The position numbers and the translations under genes were made by a program. From positions 43,320,054 to 43,383,231 of the forward strand of contig NC_068998.1 of the NCBI RefSeq assembly GCF_001194135.2: a DNA stretch of 63,178 bases, in the 5' to 3' direction. Source of the stretch: Octopus bimaculoides (taxonomy: Eukaryota). The stretch's first letter is position 1, and each line of letters begins with the position of its first letter. The notes beneath the pieces were generated by a model. That model ran no database searches. It was given only the letters and a program-made list of their open reading frames with translations, and was not told where the DNA came from. Shown piece by piece: positions 978 through 61,609 of this stretch.

Positions 978-1203
978 TATCCACTGGTAAAGACTCCCGC
1001 TTACTTTCTATTTTTCTATGAAAATCCTCATCTCATGTCCTCTCCTGCTGCAGCCAAAACTGCAAGGATAATCTGGATCTTGACTGAAGAAAGAAAACAC
1101 CGAATGACCTGTCTGTGCTTTCTTTGTATTATTTATCTGGATGTTTTGTCCCTTTCTTGGATCACCTAACTGTCTGGATGTCTTGTGTTCTTGTCCCATT
1201 CTG

Positions 1204-1247
<44 letters not shown>

Positions 1248-1251
<4 letters not shown>

Positions 1252-1632
1252 AAATGGGAGGTGTTTGTGGACAAGCCATTGCCTGAAAGCATCATTGTGT
1301 CAGCACTTTGGCCTGACCTGGTGTTGGTAGATGAGGGTCAGAGACGTGTGGTCCATGGGGAGGAGAGTATTGCTGAGGCCCATGAGCGGAAGCTGTTGGG
1401 CTATGAAGAGCTGGTAGCTGAGATTTGGGAGAAAGGTTACATCTGTGAGCTGGTTGCATTCAAGTTATGCTGCAGGGGTTTCCCAGCAGCTTCTTTCAGT
1501 AGGTTTCTGAAGTTGCCTGGTGTATCTGCTGTGAGGAAGACCATCAAGGAATGTGGGGAGAAAGCAGTTGGAGGTAGTGCTTGGATTATCAGGAGGTTTG
1601 TGAATGCGTATAAGGCCACAACACTGTCATGA
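1248..1632 (+). mobile_element. 5'-truncated HERO/NeSL-like non-LTR retrotransposon remnant (restriction-like endonuclease C-terminus)
   Basis: Translation WEVFVDKPLPESIIVSALWPDLVLVD..EESIAEAHERKLLGYEELV..CCRGF..GSAWI matches the PD..D / EEAHERK..KY / GCRGF pattern of RLE-type LINEs; the usual ELTVPW motif is missing, so it is decayed. Confidence 0.78.
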
Positions 1633-10322: not shown

Positions 10323-11010
10323 TATTATTATTATTAGTGTTGTTGTTGTTGTTACGAATGATATAATGATATAGGAGCCAAATGATTGTCAGAGGAAGTG
10401 ATAAAATTGACTGCTCATCTTCCTGNNNNNNNNNNCAAAAGTTAGAAATTCTTATTCTCCTCCTTCTCCTCCTCTTCCTTCTTCTTCTTCTTCTTCTTCT
10501 TCTTCTTCTTCTCATTATTATTATTATTGTTTGTCTTACATTCTCTGACTGTGAGACAATAATTGTTACTATTCATACCAAAGTGAAACTGAAAGTCTCT
10601 CAAATATTGCAAAGCACCCAGCACACATATATCATTCTAATAAGCAATCATCTCTATCAGTCTGTCACTCTCTCCTCCACCCTCTCTCTCTCCCCTCTCT
10701 CTTTTTCTCTTAATTTTTCTTCTTCTTTACTTAAGAGATTTCTGCTAAATTCTGTGGTACATTACTACTTGCCACAATTCCTTATTTCTTTTTTTCTTTT
10801 TCATTTTCGTATAGCTTTTTTTTTGTTTTCTACAAGAAAGCTATACACTCACTCTTTACAATACAATTTCTTGACTCTCATTTTTTTTTTTCTTTTCTTT
10901 CCATCCTTCTCATTTTTCCTCATCTTGTGTATTTTTTGACACTTGCTACTTTTCATTGCTACTATCCCCCCTCATTAGACAAATGTAAATGTATTTCGTT
11001 ATTTCGTAAA

Positions 11011-14657: not shown

Positions 14658-14871
14658 TGTATGTGCGTGTGTGTGTAAGTGCATCTATACATTTACGTAT
14701 TTGCTTCTATANNNNNNNNNNNNNNNNNNNNNNNNNNNNNNNNNNNNNNNNNNNNNNNNNNNNNNNNNNNNNNNNNNNNNNNNNNNNNNNNNNNNNNNNN
14801 NNNNNNNNNNNNNNNNNNNNNNNNNNNNNNNNNNNNNNNNNNNNNNNNNNNNNNNNNNNNNNNNNNNNNNN

Positions 14872-15500: not shown

Positions 15501-16486
15501 ATGATATCCATTAGGTTTGACCTCTTTTGTCTCTATGTTAAGTTTGTTTATTTTCAATACCATAATAACATCTAAATTGCTGGAAACATAAGATTTAATT
15601 AAAAATAATTTCTTAAAAATTATAGTTGTTTATTTATCTTAATTTTATTCTGATAATTCATATATTTGTATCATTTTTAGGTATTGGTCTGGCAAAAATA
15701 AATTTAAAAAATAATTTGATTTGAAGAATTATCTCCCTTAAAATCTATCCTCTCACTTTTGATTCTGTTGTAATTTTGTTATTATTGTATGTGGAATTTA
15801 TTTTCAAGCAGTTTATGTGGAGTCAGGAAATCAAATGTTGAAAATTTGGTCCTGTTTGTAAATAAATTTCTGTAAATAAAATTCTTCTACATCAAGATGC
15901 ATAATAATATACCAATGCATAACTGAGAGTACACACACACACACACACACATATTGATTGCCAGAATTTAAACATATAAACGTATCAATATTCATGTATG
16001 TGTGCATGTGCGCACATAGATAAATATGTGTGTGTATCTGTACAGATCTTTATTTTTTTCTGATTCTTGGTTTATAATTAATAGATAGATAGCATGTTTA
16101 TCATTCCAGTATTCCATAAATAAATGCCCAGAGCAGTCTTTATAGAAACCACCTAATAAGTAAATAATTAAGTACATGAATGAAAATTATCCTGATTCTA
16201 AGTAATCTTTCCTTTTTAATGTTGAAAATTGATATATGTACACAATTTACTTATTTTGGTTATGATATCCTTTTGATATTCTTAAATTTTATCTTTATAC
16301 AACATAACAATGTTGTTTATAAACAATCACCCATAGTTCCCCATGATAAAATTTCTTCTGTATTAACATCATAGGTTTTATTAGCATCTTGTCCCTTTAA
16401 CTGCTAATTAACATCATGATTTAGGATCGTCCCCTACCCAGACTCCTTTATCGACAGCTACTTTATACCCAATTTGAACTCAGAAC

Positions 16487-17492: not shown

Positions 17493-17830
17493 TGGAGGCA
17501 CATGGCTCAGTTGTTAGAGCATCAGGTTCACAATCATGAGGTAGTGAGTTCGATTCCCAGACTGGGCTGTGTGTTGTGTTTTGAACAAGACCGTTTATTT
17601 CATATTACTCCAGTTCACTTGGCTGTAGAAATGAGTCGTGATGTCACTAGTGTCAAGCTGTATTGGACTTTGCCTTTCCCTTGGATAATATCAGTGATAT
17701 GGAGAGAGGAGGTTGGTATGCATGGGCGATTGCTGGTCTTCTATAAACATCTTTGCCTGGACTTGTCACCCAGAGGGTAACTCTCTAGGTGCAATCCCAT
17801 GGTCATTCTTGACAGAAGGGGTTCTTTGCT
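17493..17830 (+). mobile_element. Family D tRNA-SINE (CORE-like central segment)
   Basis: A-box tggctcagttg, B-box gagttcgattcc, then tgtgtttttgaacaagac..ctccagttcac..gctgtagaaatgagt; same head at 55258. Confidence 0.75.
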
Positions 17831-20201: not shown

Positions 20202-20545
20202 TAAAAAAAGTTGATGAGGGCTTGGCCAAAGAGGAAAGTGTCTGTCTTTAGCTCTTTCAAATGGGTCCACCAAACCACCTCTTTCACTACAGCCACTAGA
20301 CAAATAAAAATTGCCTGCCCCTCTCGGCCAAAAGAGGGCAGCAGGGCAATCTTCACAATGGATTCAGCTGATAGCCAGATCAGTTCTACATGTGACAGCA
20401 AGTGTTCAACATAAACCCACAGGTCAGCAATACTCGGGCACTGGACTAGGGTGTTCAGAATGGTTTCATCATTCTGGGCACACCTCGGGCAGGCCTGGCT
20501 GAGGGAACTTCTGTGCCTGTAAAGTTTATCTTGAACAGGCAGCAC
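20202..20545 (-). mobile_element. L1/Tx1-clade LINE ORF2 C-terminal remnant (zinc-binding region)
   Basis: LPVQDKLYRH..CPRCAQNDETILNTLVQCPSIADLW: CxxC..ET..(H)..C..W motif of L1/Tx1 ORF2 ends. Confidence 0.8.
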
Positions 20546-20599
20546 CCCTCAGTAGCACTGCCAAGCAAGGGATTTCTGGAAGTTATCCAAAGGCCTAGC

Positions 20600-22817: not shown

Positions 22818-24439
22818 NNNNNNNNNNNNNNNNNNNNNNNNNNNNNNNNNNNNNNNNNNNNNNNNNNNNNNNNNNNNNNNNNNNNNNNNNNNNNNNNNNN
22901 NNNNNNNNNNNNNNNNNNNNNNNNNNNNNNNNNNNNNNNNNNNNNNNNNNNNNNNNNNNNNNNNNNNNNNNNNNNNNNNNNNNNNNNNNNNNNNNNNNNN
23001 NNNNNNNNNNNNNNNNNNNNNNNNNNNNNNNNNNNNNNNNNNNNNNNNNNNNNNNNNNNNNNNNNNNNNNNNNNNNNNNNNNNNNNNNNNNNNNNNNNNN
23101 NNNNNNNNNNNNNNNNNNNNNNNNNNNNNNNNNNNNNNNNNNNNNNNNNNNNNNNNNNNNNNNNNNNNNNNNNNNNNNNNNNNNNNNNNNNNNNNNNNNN
23201 NNNNNNNNNNNNNNNNNNNNNNNNNNNNNNNNNNNNNNNNNNNNNNNNNNNNNNNNNNNNNNNNNNNNNNNNNNNNNNNNNNNNNNNNNNNNNNNNNNNN
23301 NNNNNNNNNNNNNNNNNNNNNNNNNNNNNNNNNNNNNNNNNNNNNNNNNNNNNNNNNNNNNNNNNNNNNNNNNNNNNNNNNNNNNNNNNNNNNNNNNNNN
23401 NNNNNNNNNNNNNNNNNNNNNNNNNNNNNNNNNNNNNNNNNNNNNNNNNNNNNNNNNNNNNNNNNNNNNNNNNNNNNNNNNNNNNNNNNNAAAGTGTGAA
23501 GACAACAACAAAATAACAGAAGCTTCAGCAAATCACATGTGAGAAAACTACTGAATCTTAAGGGTTTTTTAATGTTTTGTTGAATTTTATTGCTTTTTTT
23601 TTGTTAAACAATTTTTTTTTATTTATTTTATTTTTGCTTAAAAATTTTTTTAAAATTTTATATTTTGTTTAAAATTTTTTTATTTATTTATTTTAATTTT
23701 TTGTGAGACAAATTTTTTTATTTATTTATTTAAATTTTTTGTGAGACAAATTTTTTTATTTTTTTTATTTTATTTTTTTTCTGTTTCGTAAATTTTGTTT
23801 TTTTTTATTCTATTTATTTTACTCTACAAAATCAAGATGAAAGAACATTTTAATTCCATTTTGTCTCTGAGACCATTTAGAAAAACAAGAACAAAAAAAA
23901 TAAAAATCAGTTTGTTTTCCATCTTTCTATACTTTTTCTTCCCATCTCTTCCTTCTCACTGAAATGACAGAAAAAGAAACAAAAAAAATTATATTTGTTT
24001 CTACAACAAAACATTGATTTGCGTGTATATGTGCATGTATATGCGTGTATATGTATGTATGGATAGATGGATGGATGAATGGATGGGTGTGTGTGCATAT
24101 GTATGTCAGTCTGTGTACGCGTGTTTCCGTGTTTATATGGCTGGTCAGTGAATATGTGTATCATGTATATCCGATTTTCTAAGTCTGTTTCTGTGTCTTC
24201 TGTTTCTTTATCCATGTTTCAATGATTGTGTATCCTTGTGCATGTATGTCAATATTGCATGTGTGCGTGAGTATATCTGTATTATTTCAGTTTGCAAGAT
24301 GTTTTACCTAATTCCACAAATAAAGTCACAGCAACATCGATCAAACTTCCTCCATTCAAATTGTGTTTTTATGAAAAGGTTTCCATTGTTTCAAATATCA
24401 CAAAATTAGCCAAAGGGAATTTGTATTACAATATTCTCT

Positions 24440-27351: not shown

Positions 27352-27590
27352 TAGAGGCTTAGTGGTTAGGGTGTTGGACTCATGATTGTAAGATTGTGGC
27401 TTTGATTTCCGGACTAGCTGATGCATCATGTTCTTGAGCAACACACTTCATTTCATGTTGCTCCAGGCCACTTATATGGCAAAAATGAATCATGCCACAG
27501 TGGACTGGCATCCCATCCAGGTGTGACTGGAATATATACACGACAGAAACTGGGAAACTGACACTATGAGTCTATATAACTCAGGAAGGA
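27352..27590 (+). mobile_element. Family D-like tRNA-SINE
   Basis: ggcttagtggttagg head, tgttcttgagcaacacacttcatttcatgttgctccag core, ggactggcatcccatccagg..cagaaactgggaaac tail. Confidence 0.72.
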
Positions 27591-35101: not shown

Positions 35102-36031
35102 NNNNNNNNNNNNNNNNNNNNNNNNNNNNNNNNNNNNNNNNNNNNNNNNNNNNNNNNNNNNNNNNNNNNNNNNNNNNNNNNNNNNNNNNNNNNNNNNNNN
35201 NNNNNNNNNNNNNNNNNNNNNNNNNNNNNNNNNNNNNNNNNNNNNNNNNNNNNNNNNNNNNNNNNNNNNNNNNNNNNNNNNNNNNNNNNNNNNNNNNNNN
35301 NNNNNNNNNNNNNNNNNNNNNNNNNNNNNNNNNNNNNNNNNNNNNNNNNNNNNNNNNNNNNNNNNNNNNNNNNNNNNNNNNNNNNNNNNNNNNNNNNNNN
35401 NNNNNNNNNNNNNNNNNNNNNNNNNNNNNNNNNNNNNNNNNNNNNNNNNNNNNNNNNNNNNNNNNNNNNNNNNNNNNNNNNNNNNNNNNNNNNNNNNNNN
35501 NNNNNNNNNNNNNNNNNNNNNNNNNNNNNNNNNNNNNNNNNNNNNNNNNNNNNNNNNNNNNNNNNNNNNNNNNNNNNNNNNNNNNNNNNNNNNNNNNNNN
35601 NNNNNNNNNNNNNNNNNNNNNNNNNNNNNNNNNNNNNNNNNNNNNNNNNNNNNNNNNNNNNNNNNNNNNNNNNNNNNNNNNNNNNNNNNNNNNNNNNNNN
35701 NNNNNNNNNNNNNNNNNNNNNNNNNNNNNNNNNNNNNNNNNNNNNNNNNNNNNNNNNNNNNNNNNNNNNNNNNNNNNNNNNNNNNNNNNNNNNNNNNNNN
35801 NNNNNNNNNNNNNNNNNNNNNNNNNNNNNNNNNNNNNNNNNNNNNNNNNNNNNNNNNNNNNNNNNNNNNNNNNNNNNNNNNNNNNNNNNNNNNNNNNNNN
35901 NNNNNNNNNNNNNNNNNNNNNNNNNNNNNNNNNNNNNNNNNNNNNNNNNNNNNNNNNNNNNNNNNNNNNNNNNNNNNNNNNNNNNNNNNNNNNNNNNNNN
36001 NNNNNNNNNNNNNNNNNNNNNNNNNNNNNNN

Positions 36032-39801: not shown

Positions 39802-39811
39802 NNNNNNNNNN

Positions 39812-42182: not shown

Positions 42183-42943
42183 CCTTTGTTTTTCTGTTGT
42201 TGTTTTAAACAAAAATCTCACCATCATCATTATCATCGTTTAATGTCCATTTTCCATGCTGGCATGGGTTGGACAAAATATAGAATCTACCTCCAACAGG
42301 ACTTGGTTCAACAATCCCCAGCTTAGGAGGCCGGTACCTTATCTATTGGGCCATGGAGGTGCTTGCCCCAGTAATGTTCTTCCATTCTTCACCCTTGTGA
42401 CAAACAGAATAAATCATCATTATTATTTCTCCCATTACAATTTAAATTCTCCTGGGAGTCTGCCTTACCTTTCAACCTCCTAGAATACAATATGTGAAGT
42501 GTTAAGCATTGATCTCATTGCTTCCAACACTTCTAAAATTAGTGGACATGTGCCAAAGTTTGAAATCATAACCATTATTGTAATTTCTATTATTGCACAA
42601 AGAAATGATTTTTTTAATGCAAGAATTCCTAAAGAGAATAATGATTATTATGCTACTGATATCAGCAATAGTAATTTATTATATATTGACTAATTCTAAG
42701 TAGTTGTATATAATATTTTGTATTTGCCTTTTACACCACTATCTCCAACAATTTGGTAAAACAAAAAAAAAAAAAAAANNNNNNNNNNAAAAAAAAAAAA
42801 AAAAAAAAACGAACAAAAAAAGCAACAATTGTGAAATTTTCCAAGCTAATATTTAGTAATAAAATAAATAACTCATTATTTTAATTAAATTACATTTCCT
42901 GTTTTCTCCTTCTTCTTCCACTCAGCCACACATTCGAGTATAA

Positions 42944-43399: not shown

Positions 43400-43541
43400 G
43401 CCTCATGGAGAGGCAAAGTGGTTAAGTTCCTTTCTAGTGTTGGGCCTGACAGAGGCAAAGTGGTTGAGTTCCTTTTGAGTGTTGGGCCTCACGGAGGTGA
43501 GGTGACTGAGTTCCTATCGAGTGTTGGGCTTCATGGAGGCA
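43400..43541. repeat. 42-bp tandem repeat, about 3.4 units
   Basis: gcctca(t/c)ggagg(c/t)aaagtg(g/a)(t/c)tgagttcct..gagtgttgg units. Confidence 0.88.
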
Positions 43542-44409
43542 ATGACCAAGACCTTTGGCATTATGCTATGCTTGAGAAGAAGACCTACAAAATGTGAATA
43601 AAAAAGCATTACATTTGAGAAAGTATTCTGCATAATAAAGGGTTAACATTATATTGTTTTAGACATGCTATGTAAGAAATAATGGTAGGATAAATGATGG
43701 ATGGTTAAGTCTTTTAGAGCTTGTTTACATTATTGTTTCATTTTTTCTCCTTTTATGTGTTGCTGTATGTTTTTAAATTAGAATTTGTAATTTTAACATA
43801 AATTAAAATTGAAAGGAATTTAAAATGGTGAAAGATTGACAAAAGATCTTTTTTTAAAGAATAAATACATGATATAGGAGAAATTAGATGCTTGAAAATA
43901 AATGGGACGTAGCTACGAAATTTAATTCTAAACATAATTGATAATTTCTTTTCACTTTTTAATAACTAATGAGATTGAAAATACTGTACTGCAATTAATT
44001 TGGTGCTTAAAAAGTAACATATGGCATTCTAATGAAAATGATATTAGTTATTTTGTTTCAATGGCCCTCCTGAGATATAAGATATTTGATATTATAAACG
44101 GCAATTTGAAGCTGACAAAAGTCATTCACTCACTGACAAGACTTAACTACAGGTCTATCACTTCTTGTTTTCAGTTTATGTTCTCTTTTGTCAACCTGTA
44201 TCCTCTTTATTTTAATTCCCTCATTAGCAGAATGATTAGGGGACAAGACAAAATACCTGTGGCATTTTTTTTTCTTTTTTCTTTTAGTAAAGAAGTTTTC
44301 TTAAAGACTTTTTAACTCATTCTATTGGTCTCTTTTCCCAAACCACTATACAAACACACACAAACATCTATTGACATATAGATATGTATATGTGTTTGTG
44401 TGTGCATAT

Positions 44410-44917
<508 letters not shown>

Positions 44918-46334
44918 ACAAAAGAAAAAAAAAACAGAATATATTTAGATTTATGTGGACATTTGCAGACACAAACACTAAAGTAATGTTTTCAAATATA
45001 TGTTTAAGTCAAAACCTACATATGTGTACACATGATTGTACTGTAAACACTGCATTTGTATGTTAAGTTGATTTCCATTTCAACTAAATCAGCAGAATGT
45101 AAGTATTCTGTCATGTAATTAGCTTCACCTAGTTTTGAGAGTGGATACCATTCCCAGTTCTTATCACTTAGACCTCTTAACAATCAGTCAATTAGTCTTA
45201 CTCAAAGATATATTGCTTTTCTCTATGCATCTAAAGAAAAAAATAATTCAAAGATTATTCACCTGATAAGTAAAGATTCATTGAACATTAGTATTTTCTC
45301 CCATTTTCCAACCATCACCTATCCTGCTGTGTCCTCTCTCTGTCTCTTTCTCTACTGGTACTTAGATTCTTACTCTGTTGAATTTACTGATTATATATAT
45401 CATCTCAAAGTAAACCCAACAATTTAACTCAACTCTCCTTTTGCTTGTAATCGTTTTAGTCTCTTGATTCCTGGAAACATACAGACAAAGCACATTTTAC
45501 CAACTTTTCCCTTTTCAGATTTCAACCGTCTAGAATTTAATCTTTGTTTATGTTTTATTCCCTTCGACCAAAATGAATATTAACCATGACAATGTCTCCT
45601 TGTTATCCACTCTAACTCTGCATTAAAAGAAGAAAAAAAATGAAATGGACTGCTTCATTTTTTAATGGCTTTGTCAGAAGAAGGCAAACAACCATGGTCT
45701 TTTGTCAGAGCTTCACTGATTGGTCTTATGTTGATGCAGTTGTTGTTTTTGTTTAACCCTCGTTAGTTCTATATGTGTGTATATATTCACCAGCTTAAAA
45801 ACTAGTCTTGTTCTCTATGTTGTATCCCTTTCTCTACTATAATTTAACACTTAAAATACGGACTGCTTAGAGATAAATTTGCATGCTGTTCTTTCTAGCA
45901 GTCCAAGTAGCCAGTACACACACCTGGTAAAATGCTAAGCATCATCTCATCCAGCTTTGCATTCTAAGTTCAAATTCCCCTGTGATCAACTTTGCATTTC
46001 ACCCTTTTGAGGGCCAATAAAATAAATACCAGTTGAGCACAGTTGACCATAATCTTGAAATCTTATTTGGTTTAGAACATCAAAATTAATTTTGTTTCCT
46101 CTCTTTTCATCTATTTATTGGAAGTTATTTGTTTATTAGAATTTGGAAATCTAATAAACATTATGTATGCTAGAATTCCAAATATCTTCTTTTCTTACAG
46201 AAAATTTTTGCTTTATTTTGCTTTGAAAAATAAAATAACTATATTGATTTTACATATTGGTACAAAGCCACTTCTTGAAATTACGCTATATGTGTTACTG
46301 GTACTTACTTTGGCATCCACAGAGAGAAGACTGA

Positions 46335-46582
46335 GGTTAGTCCACATGACTCTGTAAGAAGCATGGGGCTGGTTTCCTGGTTTCTCTGACAGATACATTC
46401 CTCCCAGAGCAGGATGTTGGTCTGTCACAGCATTACAAATTTTTATCAGCTGAGTGGACTGGAGTAGCATAAAATGAAATGTTTTGCTCAAGAACACAAC
46501 ACATCACCTTGTCCAGGGATTGAAACCACAGTCTTACTATCAAGAGTCTAATACCCTGTCCACTAAGCCATGTACCTCCACT
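46335..46582 (-). mobile_element. Family D tRNA-SINE
   Basis: Minus strand gtggaggtacatggcttagtgg..gtttcaatccc..tgtgttcttgagcaaaac..ccagtccactcagctg. Confidence 0.75.
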
Positions 46583-46750
46583 GAGAAGACTAATATGACA
46601 TTAATTGACACGAGTCAACATTAGGGAATTGAAACCATTATTCAAAAGAGTACTAAACACTACATGTCCAATTTATTTTAGAGCTTAACTATTTCTGCTA
46701 AGTTGATGTTGTCTTTCATAAATAACGATGATAATTTTATTAAATAATAA

Positions 46751-46781
46751 CTTTTCTTTTTCTTTCTAATTTCAGGTAAGT
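46751..46781 (+). promoter_or_regulatory. Candidate recursive splice site (zero-length exon / ratchet point)
   Basis: cttttctttttctttctaatttCAG|GTAAGT; no other AG from 46703 to 46773; lies outside any recognised repeat. Confidence 0.6.
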
Positions 46782-47142
46782 GAAGGTTTTTATCCCATCA
46801 CTCTAACAAAGGAGAAATGAACAACAATAGAAATTTTTTAAACAGGAAATAAAAGAAAATATACAGGGAAGTATTAAAGCAAATATTTTATTATGTTTAT
46901 TCCATTATGCAAATGTGAGGGTTAGGTTTGAAAGGTGTTAGTGTAGACCAGTGTTTCTTACAGTGGGTTCCATAGAAAAATTTTGTGGAGTCTTTTCATA
47001 AAATGTAATAAAAATTGATTTTATTTAAAAAGAATGGTATTAACTCTTTGAAAATAATGTTATGTGATATTTTAATGTGAATAAATTCACTCTGTATGCG
47101 ATTTCTGTTTTACTAAATGTCTTCTTAATATTAAGGTAATAT

Positions 47143-47362
47143 AAGGTACCAAGCTGGCAGAATAGTTACTGTGCCGGGCAAAAGGCTTAGCAGCATTCCG
47201 TCAGTCTTTATGTCCCGGGTTCAAATTCTGGCGAGGTCAGCTTTGCCTTTCATCCTTTTGAGGTCGATAAAATAAGTACCAGTTGTATCCTTGAGTCATG
47301 TAATCAACTTACTCCTCTCCCCTAAAATTGTTGATCTTGTGCCAAAATTTAAAGCCAATATT
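47143..47362 (+). mobile_element. Family A SINE, full length
   Basis: ccaagctggcagaat..gggttcaaattc..ctttgcctttcatccttttgaggtcgataaaataagtaccag. Confidence 0.85.
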
Positions 47363-47898
47363 AAAGTAATGTAAGGCAGGGAACTGGCAAAAATGGGGCT
47401 AATGCAGTTTCACATCTCTCCTTCTAAAATGCATTTTTAAAAACAAAAATTTCTGGATTTCTACATTTTAGATGTCAGAGATTAGGAATATGCAAAAAAA
47501 AAAATTTTAATTTAACCCCCACCTCTCCCTCCTCTCAATAAAAATTTTTGATTTTGTTTGCTCTGAAGAGATCGTAGCGAATTGACGAACATATGCAAAC
47601 CAAAATTAAATACATACAAAAACATTAAAGTGAAAAGAATTTGTGTTTTGCTTGTGTTTGCCTTAAATGATATATTTGTCAACTAAATGTGGTTGTCCTA
47701 TAGAGGACGGTGTTACTGTTGGTTTTAGCCTCAGGAAGACATTCATATCTATCTATCTATCTATCTCTTTATACACATATCTATATGCTTATTGAAATAT
47801 AAATATTAAGAACGTAGTTTCTGGCATATTTGGAATTTCCATCATCTAAAACATAGGAAAAAAAAAATTTTGAAAAAGTTCAAAATTTTAAATGGGAG

Positions 47899-53023: not shown

Positions 53024-53304
53024 NNNNNNNNNNTTGTTTCTTACTGGTGTCAACATAGTCCACGTGGGAGCGTTTTTTTGTGTAGGGACATAATGGCTGT
53101 CTCGTGCGTTGACTTGAATCGTTGGTTGTAGTAGTAGTAGTAGTAGTAGTAGTAGTGACCGTGTTGCAAATGGTTAAACGGGTAAATGGTAAACTACTAC
53201 TACTACTACTGCTGCTGCTACGACCAACAATCACTGCTACTACTGCTATTACGGTCCTACTACTACTACGACCAACAGTCTCTGCTACTGCTGCTATTAC
53301 AGTC

Positions 53305-54455: not shown

Positions 54456-55619
54456 TTCTTGTTATTCTTCAACACTTACATGTTACTGGAAGTTCGTTTT
54501 ATGGATCTTGGAGGGATGAAAAGCGAAAACAATCATATCTGGAGGGAACTATTCGATTAAATTGATCCCACAACTTTCAGATACTTATTTTATTGACTTT
54601 GGTAAAAAAAAAAAAATAAAATGAAGAAGATAAATTCAATCATAGTGAGATTCTGAATTCCAATTGTAACGAAACATAAAAAGCTAGCTACAAGGTGTTT
54701 AATGGTTTGCTATTTCCACCCACCTAATGATGATGACGATAACGATGATCGTAACACTAACAATAATAATAGTAATAAATATTCACTATAACCGTCGGTA
54801 AAATTTAACAAAACCCCAACAACACTACATCCTATAACAATCTATTGATTTCTATTGTATATCCTGCTATCTTTTAGAATGAAGAATATTGAGAAGAGAC
54901 TGGATTTTAATGCCTTCCTCTTTTTCAATTTCTACAGTGAACAATTTACATTTGTTTAGCATTCAAACATTTTATCTATTTGTTTGCTATTCCTACAAAA
55001 ATTCTCAATGTGTGACTTGCTATTAATACTAAAACTGATTGAAAGTATCTCAGACGACTGGTTGAAGTATCTAATGTTTACATCCCATTACCCGAATCAC
55101 TGTGTAGATAACGGAGAATATTACTCTTATTGGCATAATCTGAAATTTCTATGTGGTCGTTTGATGCACTGGAAATAGCAACTAAATCTCTGTTAAATCT
55201 CTGTATTATCTTTAAAAATAATGGAAGGATACATTTAGCAAAGTAGTCTTAGATATATGTGAAGGTGCATGGCTCAGTGGTTAGAGCATCAGGCTCACGA
55301 TCATGAGATAGTGAGTTCAATTTCCAGACCAGGATGTGTGTTGTGTTCTTGAGCAAGAGAGGATCAGTGAGTCAAGTGTGTTATGGAGGACTTCTGGATT
55401 ATATTTCTAGCAGGTCAAGTTACTGCAAAAAATGTCCATCTTTGACTTTTTTTTCTGATGAGGTTGGTGCGAAGAGGATGGCTAATTATAGTTTTTGTTT
55501 CATGTAAATTCTTATATAAATCCTTTGTGATTCATATCAACCACAAAAGGATAACACAGGCTAAATTGTGCCAGTTGTCCCTAATACTGTATAGGATATT
55601 CATATTCAAATAGTTTTAA

Positions 55620-59978: not shown

Positions 59979-60375
59979 GTACTTGAGATTGCAGTGGTGC
60001 AAAGCTAGAGTTGCAAACATACTCTTAGTTTTAGTTCATATATATATATANNNNNNNNNNNNNNNNNNNNNNNNNNNNNNNNNNNNNNNNNNNNNNNNNN
60101 NNNNNNNNNNNNNNNNNNNNNNNNNNNNNNNNNNNNNNNNNNNNNNNNNNNNNNNNNNNNNNNNNNNNNNNNNNNNNNNNNNNNNNNNNNNNNNNNNNNN
60201 NNNNNNNNNNNNNNNNNNNNNNNNNNNNNNNNNNNNNNNNNNNNNNNNNNNNNNNNNNNNNNNNNNNNNNNNNNNNNNNNNNNNNNNNNNNNNNNNNNNN
60301 NNNNNNNNNNNNNNNNNNNNNNNNNNNNNNNNNNNNNNNNNNNNNNNNNNNNNNNNNNNNNNNNCCTTATTAATA

Positions 60376-61046: not shown

Positions 61047-61609
61047 GTGAGTGAAAAGTGTAAAGAGGAGAGAAATAGATGGGTGAGGTGTATTTAAATG
61101 GTGGTATGAGACAAAAACGAAGCTTTTAACAGTCAAATGGGAAAACTCCAGTCCTTACTGCTTGTAAGAAATTGACCAGTTGGTCAAAATATCTTTCTGG
61201 CTATGAGAACAAGAGGAGAAAATTTCATGTCAAGAGTTCAGGAAGGTTCCTGAGTAGCATGAATTATTCATGACAATACTTTTTACCAGTAAACAAAGAA
61301 CACACCTTGTACTGTGGTAGACATGTGGTCCTCACTTTCCCAGGACTCGCCAGTTAGTGTTATAGAGTACTTGATTTTCCTTCAGTAGCCATATGTATCT
61401 TGCCAAAGTTGTGATGTTATGTCTTACCTGGATTATGGAGAAGAAACATGCAATTACTTAGTCTCAACTTGAAAAGAGTTTCCTAAGCGCTACCATATCT
61501 ACGTATATACCTTCCTCCCCCTCCTCATCATCATCATCGCCACCACTACCAATACTACAACTAAGAGTTTACTGCTAGAAAGAGTACATTTTTATAACTA
61601 GTTATTCAC

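What the first reader, a model, noticed from the sequence alone, without database searches (positions are those of the whole stretch)
46703..46781. Strong recursive-splicing ratchet point candidate
Seen: a ~22-nt pyrimidine tract plus CAG followed immediately by a perfect GTAAGT donor, with a 71-nt AG-free zone upstream, in non-repeat DNA. Established: AG|GT ratchet points subdivide very long introns in Drosophila and some vertebrate neuronal genes. Inference: the window lies in a long + strand intron that is spliced recursively; I do not know of this being characterised in cephalopods. A weaker + strand candidate is ttttttAG|GTATTG at 15680/15681.
Basis: partly seen in the sequence, partly recalled or inferred. 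Interest (0 to 1): 0.72.

Follow-up and report, generated by a model that had tools for sequence, protein, structure and literature searches.

The report
Ratchet-point-like splice motif in octopus DNA
A near-perfect "splice acceptor fused to splice donor" motif really is present in single-copy, non-coding octopus DNA and is rarer than chance for one window, but nothing available here shows that the DNA is transcribed on that strand, so its use as a recursive splice site is unproven.

Summary
Window 46751-46781 (+) reads cttttctttttctttctaatttcag|GTAAGT, and a 71-nt AG-free zone lies upstream. Among all sites in the window on both strands, the donor ranks 2nd of 6807 GT and the acceptor 6th of 6671 AG. 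Their combined score of 26.5 bits has no rival in the window (next best 21.7, on the opposite strand). It also has no rival in 249 kb of real Octopus vulgaris/sinensis DNA fetched for calibration (best 22.0).

The expected chance rate is about 0.01-0.03 per window. That still means several hundred such motifs per genome. The motif lies in a 540-bp segment with no other copy found, between two interspersed repeats.

The interpretation could not be tested. I found no coding exon anywhere in the 63 kb, so no host gene or transcribed strand is known. No orthologous DNA or RNA data could be reached. The 15680 candidate is at chance level.

My estimates are about 0.5 for an unused fortuitous motif, about 0.33 for a site used in recursive splicing, and about 0.1 for the boundary of an unannotated exon. 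If real, it would be a new member of a known kind, in a new clade.

The parts
46703..46773 (+). AG-free zone (71 nt) upstream of the acceptor AG
   Evidence: No AG between 46703 and 46773. The previous AG is at 46701-46702. Gaps of 71 nt or more are 3.3% of AG-to-AG intervals in the window.
46745..46751 (+). Best candidate branch point, TAATAAC (branch A at 46750, 25 nt upstream of the acceptor G)
   Evidence: Motif scan. AATAAT (A at 46747) is an alternative. CTAAT (A at 46769) is only 6 nt from the AG and probably too close. This is inferred from consensus only.
46751..46773 (+). Polypyrimidine tract cttttctttttctttctAAtttc (21 of 23 pyrimidines; TT at -5/-6)
   Evidence: The acceptor score of 13.7 bits ranks 6th of 6671 AG. 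It is not a tandem-repeat array.
46774..46781 (+). Composite junction AG|GTAAGT. The acceptor AG is at 46774-46775. The regenerating donor GTAAGT is at 46776-46781. CAG|GTAAGT is fully complementary to the 5' end of U1.
   Evidence: The donor score of 12.85 bits ranks 2nd (tied) of 6807 GT. The combined 26.5 bits is the top of 309 AGGT sites in the window and above all 1323 AGGT sites in 249 kb of other octopus DNA, whose best is 22.0.
46776..46914 (+). Candidate cryptic recursive-splicing exon (139 nt, purine/A-rich, stops in all three frames), ended by the weaker donor aat|GTGAGG at 46915-46920. Alternative donors are at 46921 and 46963.
   Evidence: donor 7.9 bits against 12.85 for the ratchet-point donor; frames closed: VSEGFYPITLTKEK*, and stops within the first three codons in the other two frames. 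A donor of this strength within 150 nt is not unusual, so this part is compatible with the model but not diagnostic.
46420..46584 (-). tRNA-derived SINE-like interspersed repeat directly upstream (context, not part of the motif)
   Evidence: Copies in the window at 27356-27486, 17493-17632 and 55259-55356, and in O. vulgaris loci, for example L005 at 82% identity.
47122..47364 (+). Second abundant interspersed repeat downstream, with a partial copy at 45918-46042 (context). Together these repeats bracket the single-copy segment 46582-47121.
   Evidence: More than 12 copies in the window and about 10 in 204 kb of O. vulgaris DNA.

Best explanation
The element is a genuine, near-consensus composite splice site. 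It has a candidate branch point, a strong pyrimidine tract, and CAG fused to GTAAGT. It sits in single-copy, exon-free, non-coding DNA of an octopus.

My single most likely reading is that it is a fortuitous, unselected juxtaposition that is not used. Either the locus is not transcribed or it is transcribed from the other strand.

Shown: the motif, its rarity per window, its single-copy context, and the absence of any detectable exon in 63 kb.

Inferred: a multi-gigabase, T-rich, low-complexity-rich genome should produce several hundred such motifs by chance. Only a minority of positions lie in sense-strand introns. In lineages with generally long introns (vertebrates), very few strong AG|GT motifs are real recursive sites.
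For: The chance expectation is 0.009-0.03 per 61-kb window on both strands together. For a genome of about 2.7 Gb (size from memory), that is about 400-1300 chance sites.

No coding exon, host gene or gene call was found in the window, so nothing places the motif in a + strand transcript.

The second-best composite site in the window is on the opposite strand at 61429 (ccag|GTAAGAC, 21.7 bits). Good AG|GT composites therefore occur here without strand consistency.

Only one strong + strand site occurs in 63 kb; the next + strand AGGT scores 15.7 bits.

No comparably strong motif occurs on the sense strand of about 104 kb of annotated O. vulgaris gene ranges.

In human, 10.6 million intronic AGGT sites and 1.67 million predicted-good ones reduce to 3,022 with RNA support. 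Sibley et al.'s 434 candidates reduce to 9.
Against: At the level of this one window the motif is improbable by chance (about 1-3%).

Every sequence feature known for fly ratchet points is present: a strong Y tract, TT at -5/-6, CAG|GTAAGT, a plausible branch point at -25, an AG-exclusion zone, and a weaker downstream donor closing an out-of-frame cryptic exon.

It lies in non-repeat sequence.

An exon-free 63-kb stretch is what a giant intron would look like.

If octopus had roughly 500 or more selected sites of this strength, the odds would be even or better for function.
Confidence: 0.5

Rival explanations
1. A recursive splice site (ratchet point) in a very long + strand intron, working in steps. 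(1) The upstream exon's donor is spliced to the AG at 46775, using a branch point near 46750 and exon definition across a cryptic exon of about 139 nt (46776-46914). (2) The junction regenerates ...|GTAAGT. (3) This donor out-competes the weaker one at 46915 and is spliced to the next acceptor downstream. Nothing from the window would remain in the mRNA.
For: The motif matches the fly consensus completely, including TT at -5/-6, which is present in 196 of 197 fly ratchet points. The donor and acceptor are both in the top 0.1% of the window. No equal was found in 249 kb of other octopus DNA. The ratchet-point donor (12.85 bits) is stronger than the candidate cryptic-exon donor (7.9 bits), and the cryptic exon is out of frame with stops, as described for fly sites. 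The context is single-copy. The 63 kb has no detectable exon and so could be one intron.
Against: There is no evidence of a host gene, of + strand transcription, of use, or of conservation. The motif alone predicts poorly outside Drosophila. Only one such site occurs in at least 63 kb, and a near-consensus one lies on the other strand. A weaker downstream donor and closed frames are expected by chance. Recursive splicing has not been described in any mollusc.
Confidence: 0.33
2. An ordinary 3' splice site of an unannotated expressed exon that happens to begin with GTAAGT. The exon could be non-coding, UTR, a poison exon or an alternative exon, or an expressed recursive-splicing exon of the vertebrate type. 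It would be ended by one of the donors at 46915, 46921 or 46963.
For: The acceptor is strong and has an AG-exclusion zone. Donors lie downstream at exon-like distances of 139-187 nt. The exon body is purine-rich. Non-coding exons would escape my protein-based exon screen.
Against: All three frames are closed and there is no protein homology. The downstream donors are mediocre (5.4-7.9 bits) compared with the GTAAGT at the exon start, which should win the competition and cause skipping. There is no transcript evidence.
Confidence: 0.1
3. The splice signals came with a mobile element. The pyrimidine tract would be the antisense copy of an A-rich retroposon tail (AGAAAGAAAAAGAAAAG on the - strand), as in antisense-Alu exonisation, and the AG|GT would be incidental.
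For: The - strand reading of the tract looks like an A/G-rich 3' tail. The site is bracketed by SINE-like insertions. The window is full of retroelement debris.
Against: No other copy of 46582-47121 was found in the window, even with sensitive settings, and none in 204 kb of O. vulgaris DNA where the neighbouring families have 3-12 copies. No target-site duplication or element boundary was identified.
Confidence: 0.05

Closest known systems
Drosophila intronic ratchet points (Ubx, kuz, Bx, osp, fz; Burnette 2005, Duff 2014/2015, Joseph 2018, Pai 2018)
   Same: Juxtaposed acceptor and donor with (Y)n-CAG|GTAAGT, an exceptionally strong Y tract, and TT at -5/-6. A candidate short out-of-frame cryptic exon is closed by a weaker donor. 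The sequence is unique.
   Different: In flies the sites are defined by RNA evidence, lie in annotated long introns, are ultraconserved, and often come several to an intron. Here none of that is known, and there is one site in at least 63 kb. The candidate cryptic exon (139 nt) is longer than the roughly 50 nt typical in flies.
Vertebrate recursive-splicing exons in long neuronal genes (Sibley 2015; Blazquez 2018; Zhang 2018; 2026 preprint with 3,022 human sites)
   Same: A genome with generally long introns. Isolated sites per intron. A recursive-splicing exon of roughly 100-150 nt that is defined first and then skipped through donor competition.
   Different: Vertebrate sites are identified from total RNA or iCLIP and usually have weaker motifs than this one. 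Only a tiny fraction of good AGGT motifs are used. Host gene and expression are unknown here.
Dual-specific AG|GT splice sites (Genome Biol 2024, PMC10809524)
   Same: One AGGT tetranucleotide can serve as both 3' and 5' splice site.
   Different: That paper was only listed in the search and not read in detail. Those sites are described in expressed genes such as polyubiquitin. There is no such context here.
Cryptic 3' splice sites created by antisense A-rich retroposon tails (Alu exonisation; from general knowledge)
   Same: A T/C-rich tract upstream of an AG, in DNA crowded with SINEs.
   Different: No repeat family could be shown to cover the tract.

Membership tests
Zero-nucleotide recursive splice site / ratchet point (Drosophila type) | Acceptor AG immediately followed by a consensus donor (AG|GTAAGT or AG|GTRAGT) | tested here: met
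   CAG|GTAAGT at 46773-46781. The donor ranks 2nd of 6807.
Zero-nucleotide recursive splice site / ratchet point (Drosophila type) | Unusually strong polypyrimidine tract with TT at -5/-6 | tested here: met
   21 of 23 pyrimidines, with T at -5 and -6. The acceptor ranks 6th of 6671.
Zero-nucleotide recursive splice site / ratchet point (Drosophila type) | Lies inside a long intron of a host gene, on the sense strand | tested here: inconclusive
   No coding exon or gene call was detectable in the 63 kb. This is compatible with a giant intron or with intergenic DNA. Strand skews are weak and inconsistent.
Zero-nucleotide recursive splice site / ratchet point (Drosophila type) | Cryptic exon downstream, closed by a donor weaker than the ratchet-point donor, usually out of frame | tested here: inconclusive
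   46776-46914 with aat|GTGAGG (7.9 bits against 12.85), 139 nt, stops in all frames. Such a configuration is common by chance.
Zero-nucleotide recursive splice site / ratchet point (Drosophila type) | Motif far more conserved than its flanks in related species | not testable with these tools
   No way to retrieve orthologous octopod DNA. There is no adjacent ORF. The metagenome scan for the 21-mer gave 0 hits. The octopus loci that could be fetched are unrelated places.
Zero-nucleotide recursive splice site / ratchet point (Drosophila type) | RNA evidence: exon-to-ratchet-point junction reads, saw-tooth intron coverage, lariats from the ratchet-point donor | not testable with these tools
Interspersed repeat / retroposon-derived cryptic splice site | The sequence belongs to a multi-copy family | tested here: not met
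   No copy of 46582-47121 in the window or in 204 kb of O. vulgaris DNA. Low-copy families are not excluded.
Structured or known non-coding RNA | Match to an Rfam family, or a fold more stable than shuffles | tested here: not met
   No Rfam match at E<=1 in 45800-47600. The fold z-score is +0.68. The - strand ACTTACCTG is only the complement of the donor, not a U1 gene.

The most novel reading that the evidence does not exclude
The site is a selected, constitutively used recursive splice site that subdivides a + strand intron of more than 60 kb in an octopus gene. That would be the first ratchet point documented in a mollusc or lophotrochozoan. It would imply that the fly-type (Y)nCAG|GTAAGT solution for giant introns is ancestral to bilaterians, or arose convergently in cephalopods along with their intron expansion.
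Probability: 0.28. Interest if true: 0.5.

Novelty: new member of a known kind. Interest (0 to 1): 0.27.

Why it matters
Cephalopod genomes have very long introns, and their neuronal genes are heavily processed at the RNA level. Nobody has reported how these long introns are removed. The held literature has no study of recursive splicing in a mollusc.

A validated ratchet point would extend a mechanism known from flies and vertebrates to a third major animal lineage. It would also give a sequence rule for finding more sites. The mechanism itself would not be new, though, and one motif without RNA evidence cannot carry that claim.

The practical value of this finding is as a seed for a cheap genome-wide test: the excess of such motifs on the sense strand over the antisense strand in annotated long introns.

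Tried and rejected
1. Host-gene search.
- Translated all stop-to-stop ORFs of 50 aa or more outside in-window repeats and low complexity (133 ORFs, 8.7 kaa). Searched them as two concatenated queries against 5.8 billion proteins: no hit. A first attempt failed on the length limit.
- The ORF next to the motif gave no hit.
- 126 short ORFs (30-49 aa, GC >= 0.36) searched against PDB sequences gave no hit.
- None of 10 ATG-initiated ORFs (about 90 aa or longer) from the window is in the protein collection.
A pasted Pfam query failed on length and was not repeated.

2. Orthologue retrieval.
- No ORF of 20 aa or more spans the motif.
- An exact 21-mer scan of JGI metagenome contigs gave 0 hits.

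3. Repeat test: self-BLAST, sensitive BLAST/nhmmer, and a pattern search allowing 3 mismatches found nothing.

4. U1 pseudogene or other RNA idea: rejected.

5. RNA structure pairing the Y tract with the downstream purine-rich stretch: not better than shuffles.

6. Strand inference.
- AATAAA/ATTAAA counts are 145 on + against 189 on -.
- My arithmetic is that the 2.7% T>A base skew fully explains this: (A/T)^4 = 0.81, against an observed AATAAA ratio of 0.79.
- The skews also change sign along the window, so I rejected this as uninformative.

7. Sense-strand enrichment test in fetched octopus genes. Only about 104 kb of genic DNA from weak, transposon-related gene models was available. There were 0 strong motifs. 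This is too little to decide.

Full report
**Observation**

The + strand at 46751-46781 reads cttttctttttctttctaatttcag|GTAAGT.
- The tract 46751-46773 has 21 pyrimidines in 23 nt, including a pure run of 17.
- Positions -5 and -6 are TT. The -3 to -1 triplet is CAG (46773-46775), followed by GTAAGT (46776-46781).

The coordinates and description are therefore correct. The secondary candidate at 15680/15681 also exists (tcatttttag|GTATTG), but its tract is short and its donor is poor.

**Is it more than chance?**

I scored every AG and GT on both strands with simple acceptor and donor weight matrices. The frequencies were approximate metazoan values from memory and were used only for ranking.
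- The donor ranks 2nd (tied) of 6807 GT.
- The acceptor ranks 6th of 6671 AG.
- Among the 309 AGGT tetranucleotides, the combined score of 26.5 bits is far ahead of the next one. That next one (21.7 bits) lies on the opposite strand at 61429.
- The 15680 candidate ranks 1721st (donor) and 417th (acceptor), which is background.

Estimates of the chance rate:
- Markov simulations of order 1, 3 and 5, trained on the window (20 Mb each), gave 0, 0 and 1 strict sites.
- A more realistic estimate multiplies the observed frequency of pyrimidine-rich 20-mers by that of YAGGTAAGT. This keeps the genome's real excess of low-complexity tracts. It gives 0.02-0.03 per window.
- Calibrated on 249 kb of real O. 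vulgaris and O. sinensis DNA fetched for this purpose, the same estimate is 0.009 per 61 kb. None of the 1323 AGGT sites in that DNA exceeds 22.0 bits.

So the motif is unusual for one window (about 1-3%). For a genome of about 2.7 Gb (size from memory), the same rates predict several hundred to about a thousand such motifs with no function.

**Context**

The window is AT-rich (about 34% GC), carries eight assembly gaps, and is crowded with microsatellites and interspersed repeats.

A transposon-like ORF at 1108-1629 has its closest relatives (65-86% identity) among Octopus vulgaris hypothetical proteins. The repeats next to the motif recur in O. vulgaris loci.

The motif sits in a 540-bp segment (46582-47121) bracketed by two repeats:
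- a tRNA-derived SINE-like repeat at 46420-46584 (- strand);
- a second abundant repeat at 47122-47364.

The segment itself has no other copy in the window, even with sensitive settings. It has none in 204 kb of O. vulgaris DNA either, where the flanking families occur 3-12 times. 'Non-repeat DNA' is thus supported, short of a whole-genome search.

There is no tandem repeat at the tract, no Rfam match, and no fold better than shuffles.

**Host gene and strand**

This is the crux, and it could not be resolved.
- No ORF of 20 aa or more spans the motif. Downstream of the AG, the frames close within the first three codons in two frames and after 14 codons in the third.
- I translated every stop-to-stop ORF of 50 aa or more outside in-window repeats and low complexity (133 ORFs) and searched them against 5.8 billion proteins. 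There was no hit at E <= 1e-3. The ORF nearest the motif also gave none.
- The companion 15-billion-protein collection does contain O. vulgaris proteins, so a coding exon of ordinary size should have been seen.
- Shorter, GC-richer ORFs gave no PDB hit.
- None of 10 ATG-initiated ORFs tested (about 90 aa or longer) is on record as a called gene product.

The 63 kb is therefore either deep inside a giant intron or intergenic, and no strand can be assigned.

The + strand has a small T>A excess. However, GC skew is about zero, and both skews change sign along the window. The lower AATAAA count on + is, by my arithmetic, what the base skew alone predicts.

**How it would work if used**

Following the fly and vertebrate model, the steps would be:
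1. An upstream exon donor is spliced to the AG at 46775. The branch point would be near 46750 (TAATAAC, 25 nt upstream), with exon definition across a cryptic exon.
2. The best candidate exon is 46776-46914 (139 nt, purine-rich, out of frame, closed in all frames). It ends at aat|GTGAGG, which scores 7.9 bits.
3. The regenerated GTAAGT donor (12.85 bits) then out-competes that weaker donor and is spliced onward. No trace is left in the mRNA.

All of these steps are inferred. The cryptic-exon configuration is compatible with the model but common by chance.

**Weighing the readings**

For function:
- Every sequence criterion of fly ratchet points is met, including TT at -5/-6 (196 of 197 fly sites).
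- The site is in unique DNA and is an outlier in about 310 kb of octopus sequence.

Against function:
- There is no evidence for transcription, use or conservation.
- Only one strong + strand site occurs in at least 63 kb, while a near-consensus site lies on the other strand.
- No comparable site occurs on the sense strand of about 104 kb of admittedly weak O. vulgaris gene models.
- In the other lineage with generally long introns, motif strength predicts poorly. In human, 10.6 million intronic AGGT sites and 1.67 million predicted-good ones reduce to 3,022 supported sites. Sibley et al.'s 434 candidates reduce to 9.

Parity between the two readings would need roughly 500 selected sites of this strength in the octopus genome. 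I consider that possible but not the expectation.

My estimates:
- unused fortuitous motif: about 0.5;
- used recursive site: about 0.33;
- acceptor of an unannotated, non-coding or poison exon: about 0.1;
- repeat-borne signal: about 0.05.

**Comparison with known systems and novelty**

The element works like, and looks exactly like, a Drosophila ratchet point or a vertebrate recursive-splicing exon start. Membership cannot be granted, because the defining functional features (sense-strand long intron, RNA intermediates, conservation) were not testable.

Recursive splicing in cephalopods or any mollusc does not appear in the held literature. The only co-occurrence of the terms is incidental.

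If validated, this would be a new member of a known kind in a new clade. That is interesting for intron evolution but not mechanistically new.

**Verdict**

Interest is modest unless the simple follow-ups come out positive: locating the window in an annotated assembly, total RNA-seq, an octopod alignment, and genome-wide sense/antisense motif counts.

Noticed in passing
window 61421-61452 (- strand): Second-best composite AG|GT site in the window, on the opposite strand: catgtttcttctccataatccag|GTAAGAC. Acceptor 10.5 bits, donor 11.2 bits, AG-free zone 27 nt. It cannot be sense to the same gene as the 46776 site.
   Followed up: partly
window 1108-1629 (+): Transposon-like ORF (174 aa, no Pfam match). 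It is 65-86% identical to several Octopus vulgaris 'hypothetical predicted proteins'. It is also 49% identical to the C-terminus of roughly 1000-aa proteins from ENA assemblies. This probably marks the 3' part of a retroelement polyprotein, and it identifies the source as an octopod.
   Followed up: partly
window 20204-20548 (-): ORF fragment matching Pfam zf-RVT (zinc-binding region of reverse transcriptases; E 3e-5, just below the gathering score). This is a LINE remnant.
   Followed up: partly
window 42288-42360 (-): tRNA-like sequence above the Rfam gathering score (35.3 bits) that ARAGORN does not call. It is probably the head of a tRNA-derived SINE rather than a gene. A similar tRNA-like head is visible in the SINE at 46420-46584.
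   Followed up: no
window 43409-43542: Minisatellite: 3.2 copies of a 42-nt unit (82% matches), giving repetitive open frames on both strands.
   Followed up: no
window 10426-10435, 14712-14871, 22818-23490, 35102-36031, 39802-39811, 42779-42788, 53024-53033, 60051-60364: Eight runs of N (assembly gaps, 2117 nt in all), mostly flanked by TA/CA microsatellites. Any small exon hidden in a gap would have escaped the exon screen.
   Followed up: no
window 45918-46042 and 47122-47364, plus more than 12 other places: An abundant interspersed repeat of about 200-240 bp (70-83% identity between copies) that is also frequent in O. vulgaris loci L001, L004 and L005. Two direct copies bracket the roughly 1.1-kb stretch that holds the SINE and the motif. 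These are most likely independent insertions.
   Followed up: partly
whole window: A small T-over-A excess on the + strand ((A-T)/(A+T) = -0.027 overall, -0.031 in unmasked sequence). It fades and reverses beyond about 36 kb, together with a change in GC skew. It is too weak and inconsistent to assign a transcribed strand.
   Followed up: partly
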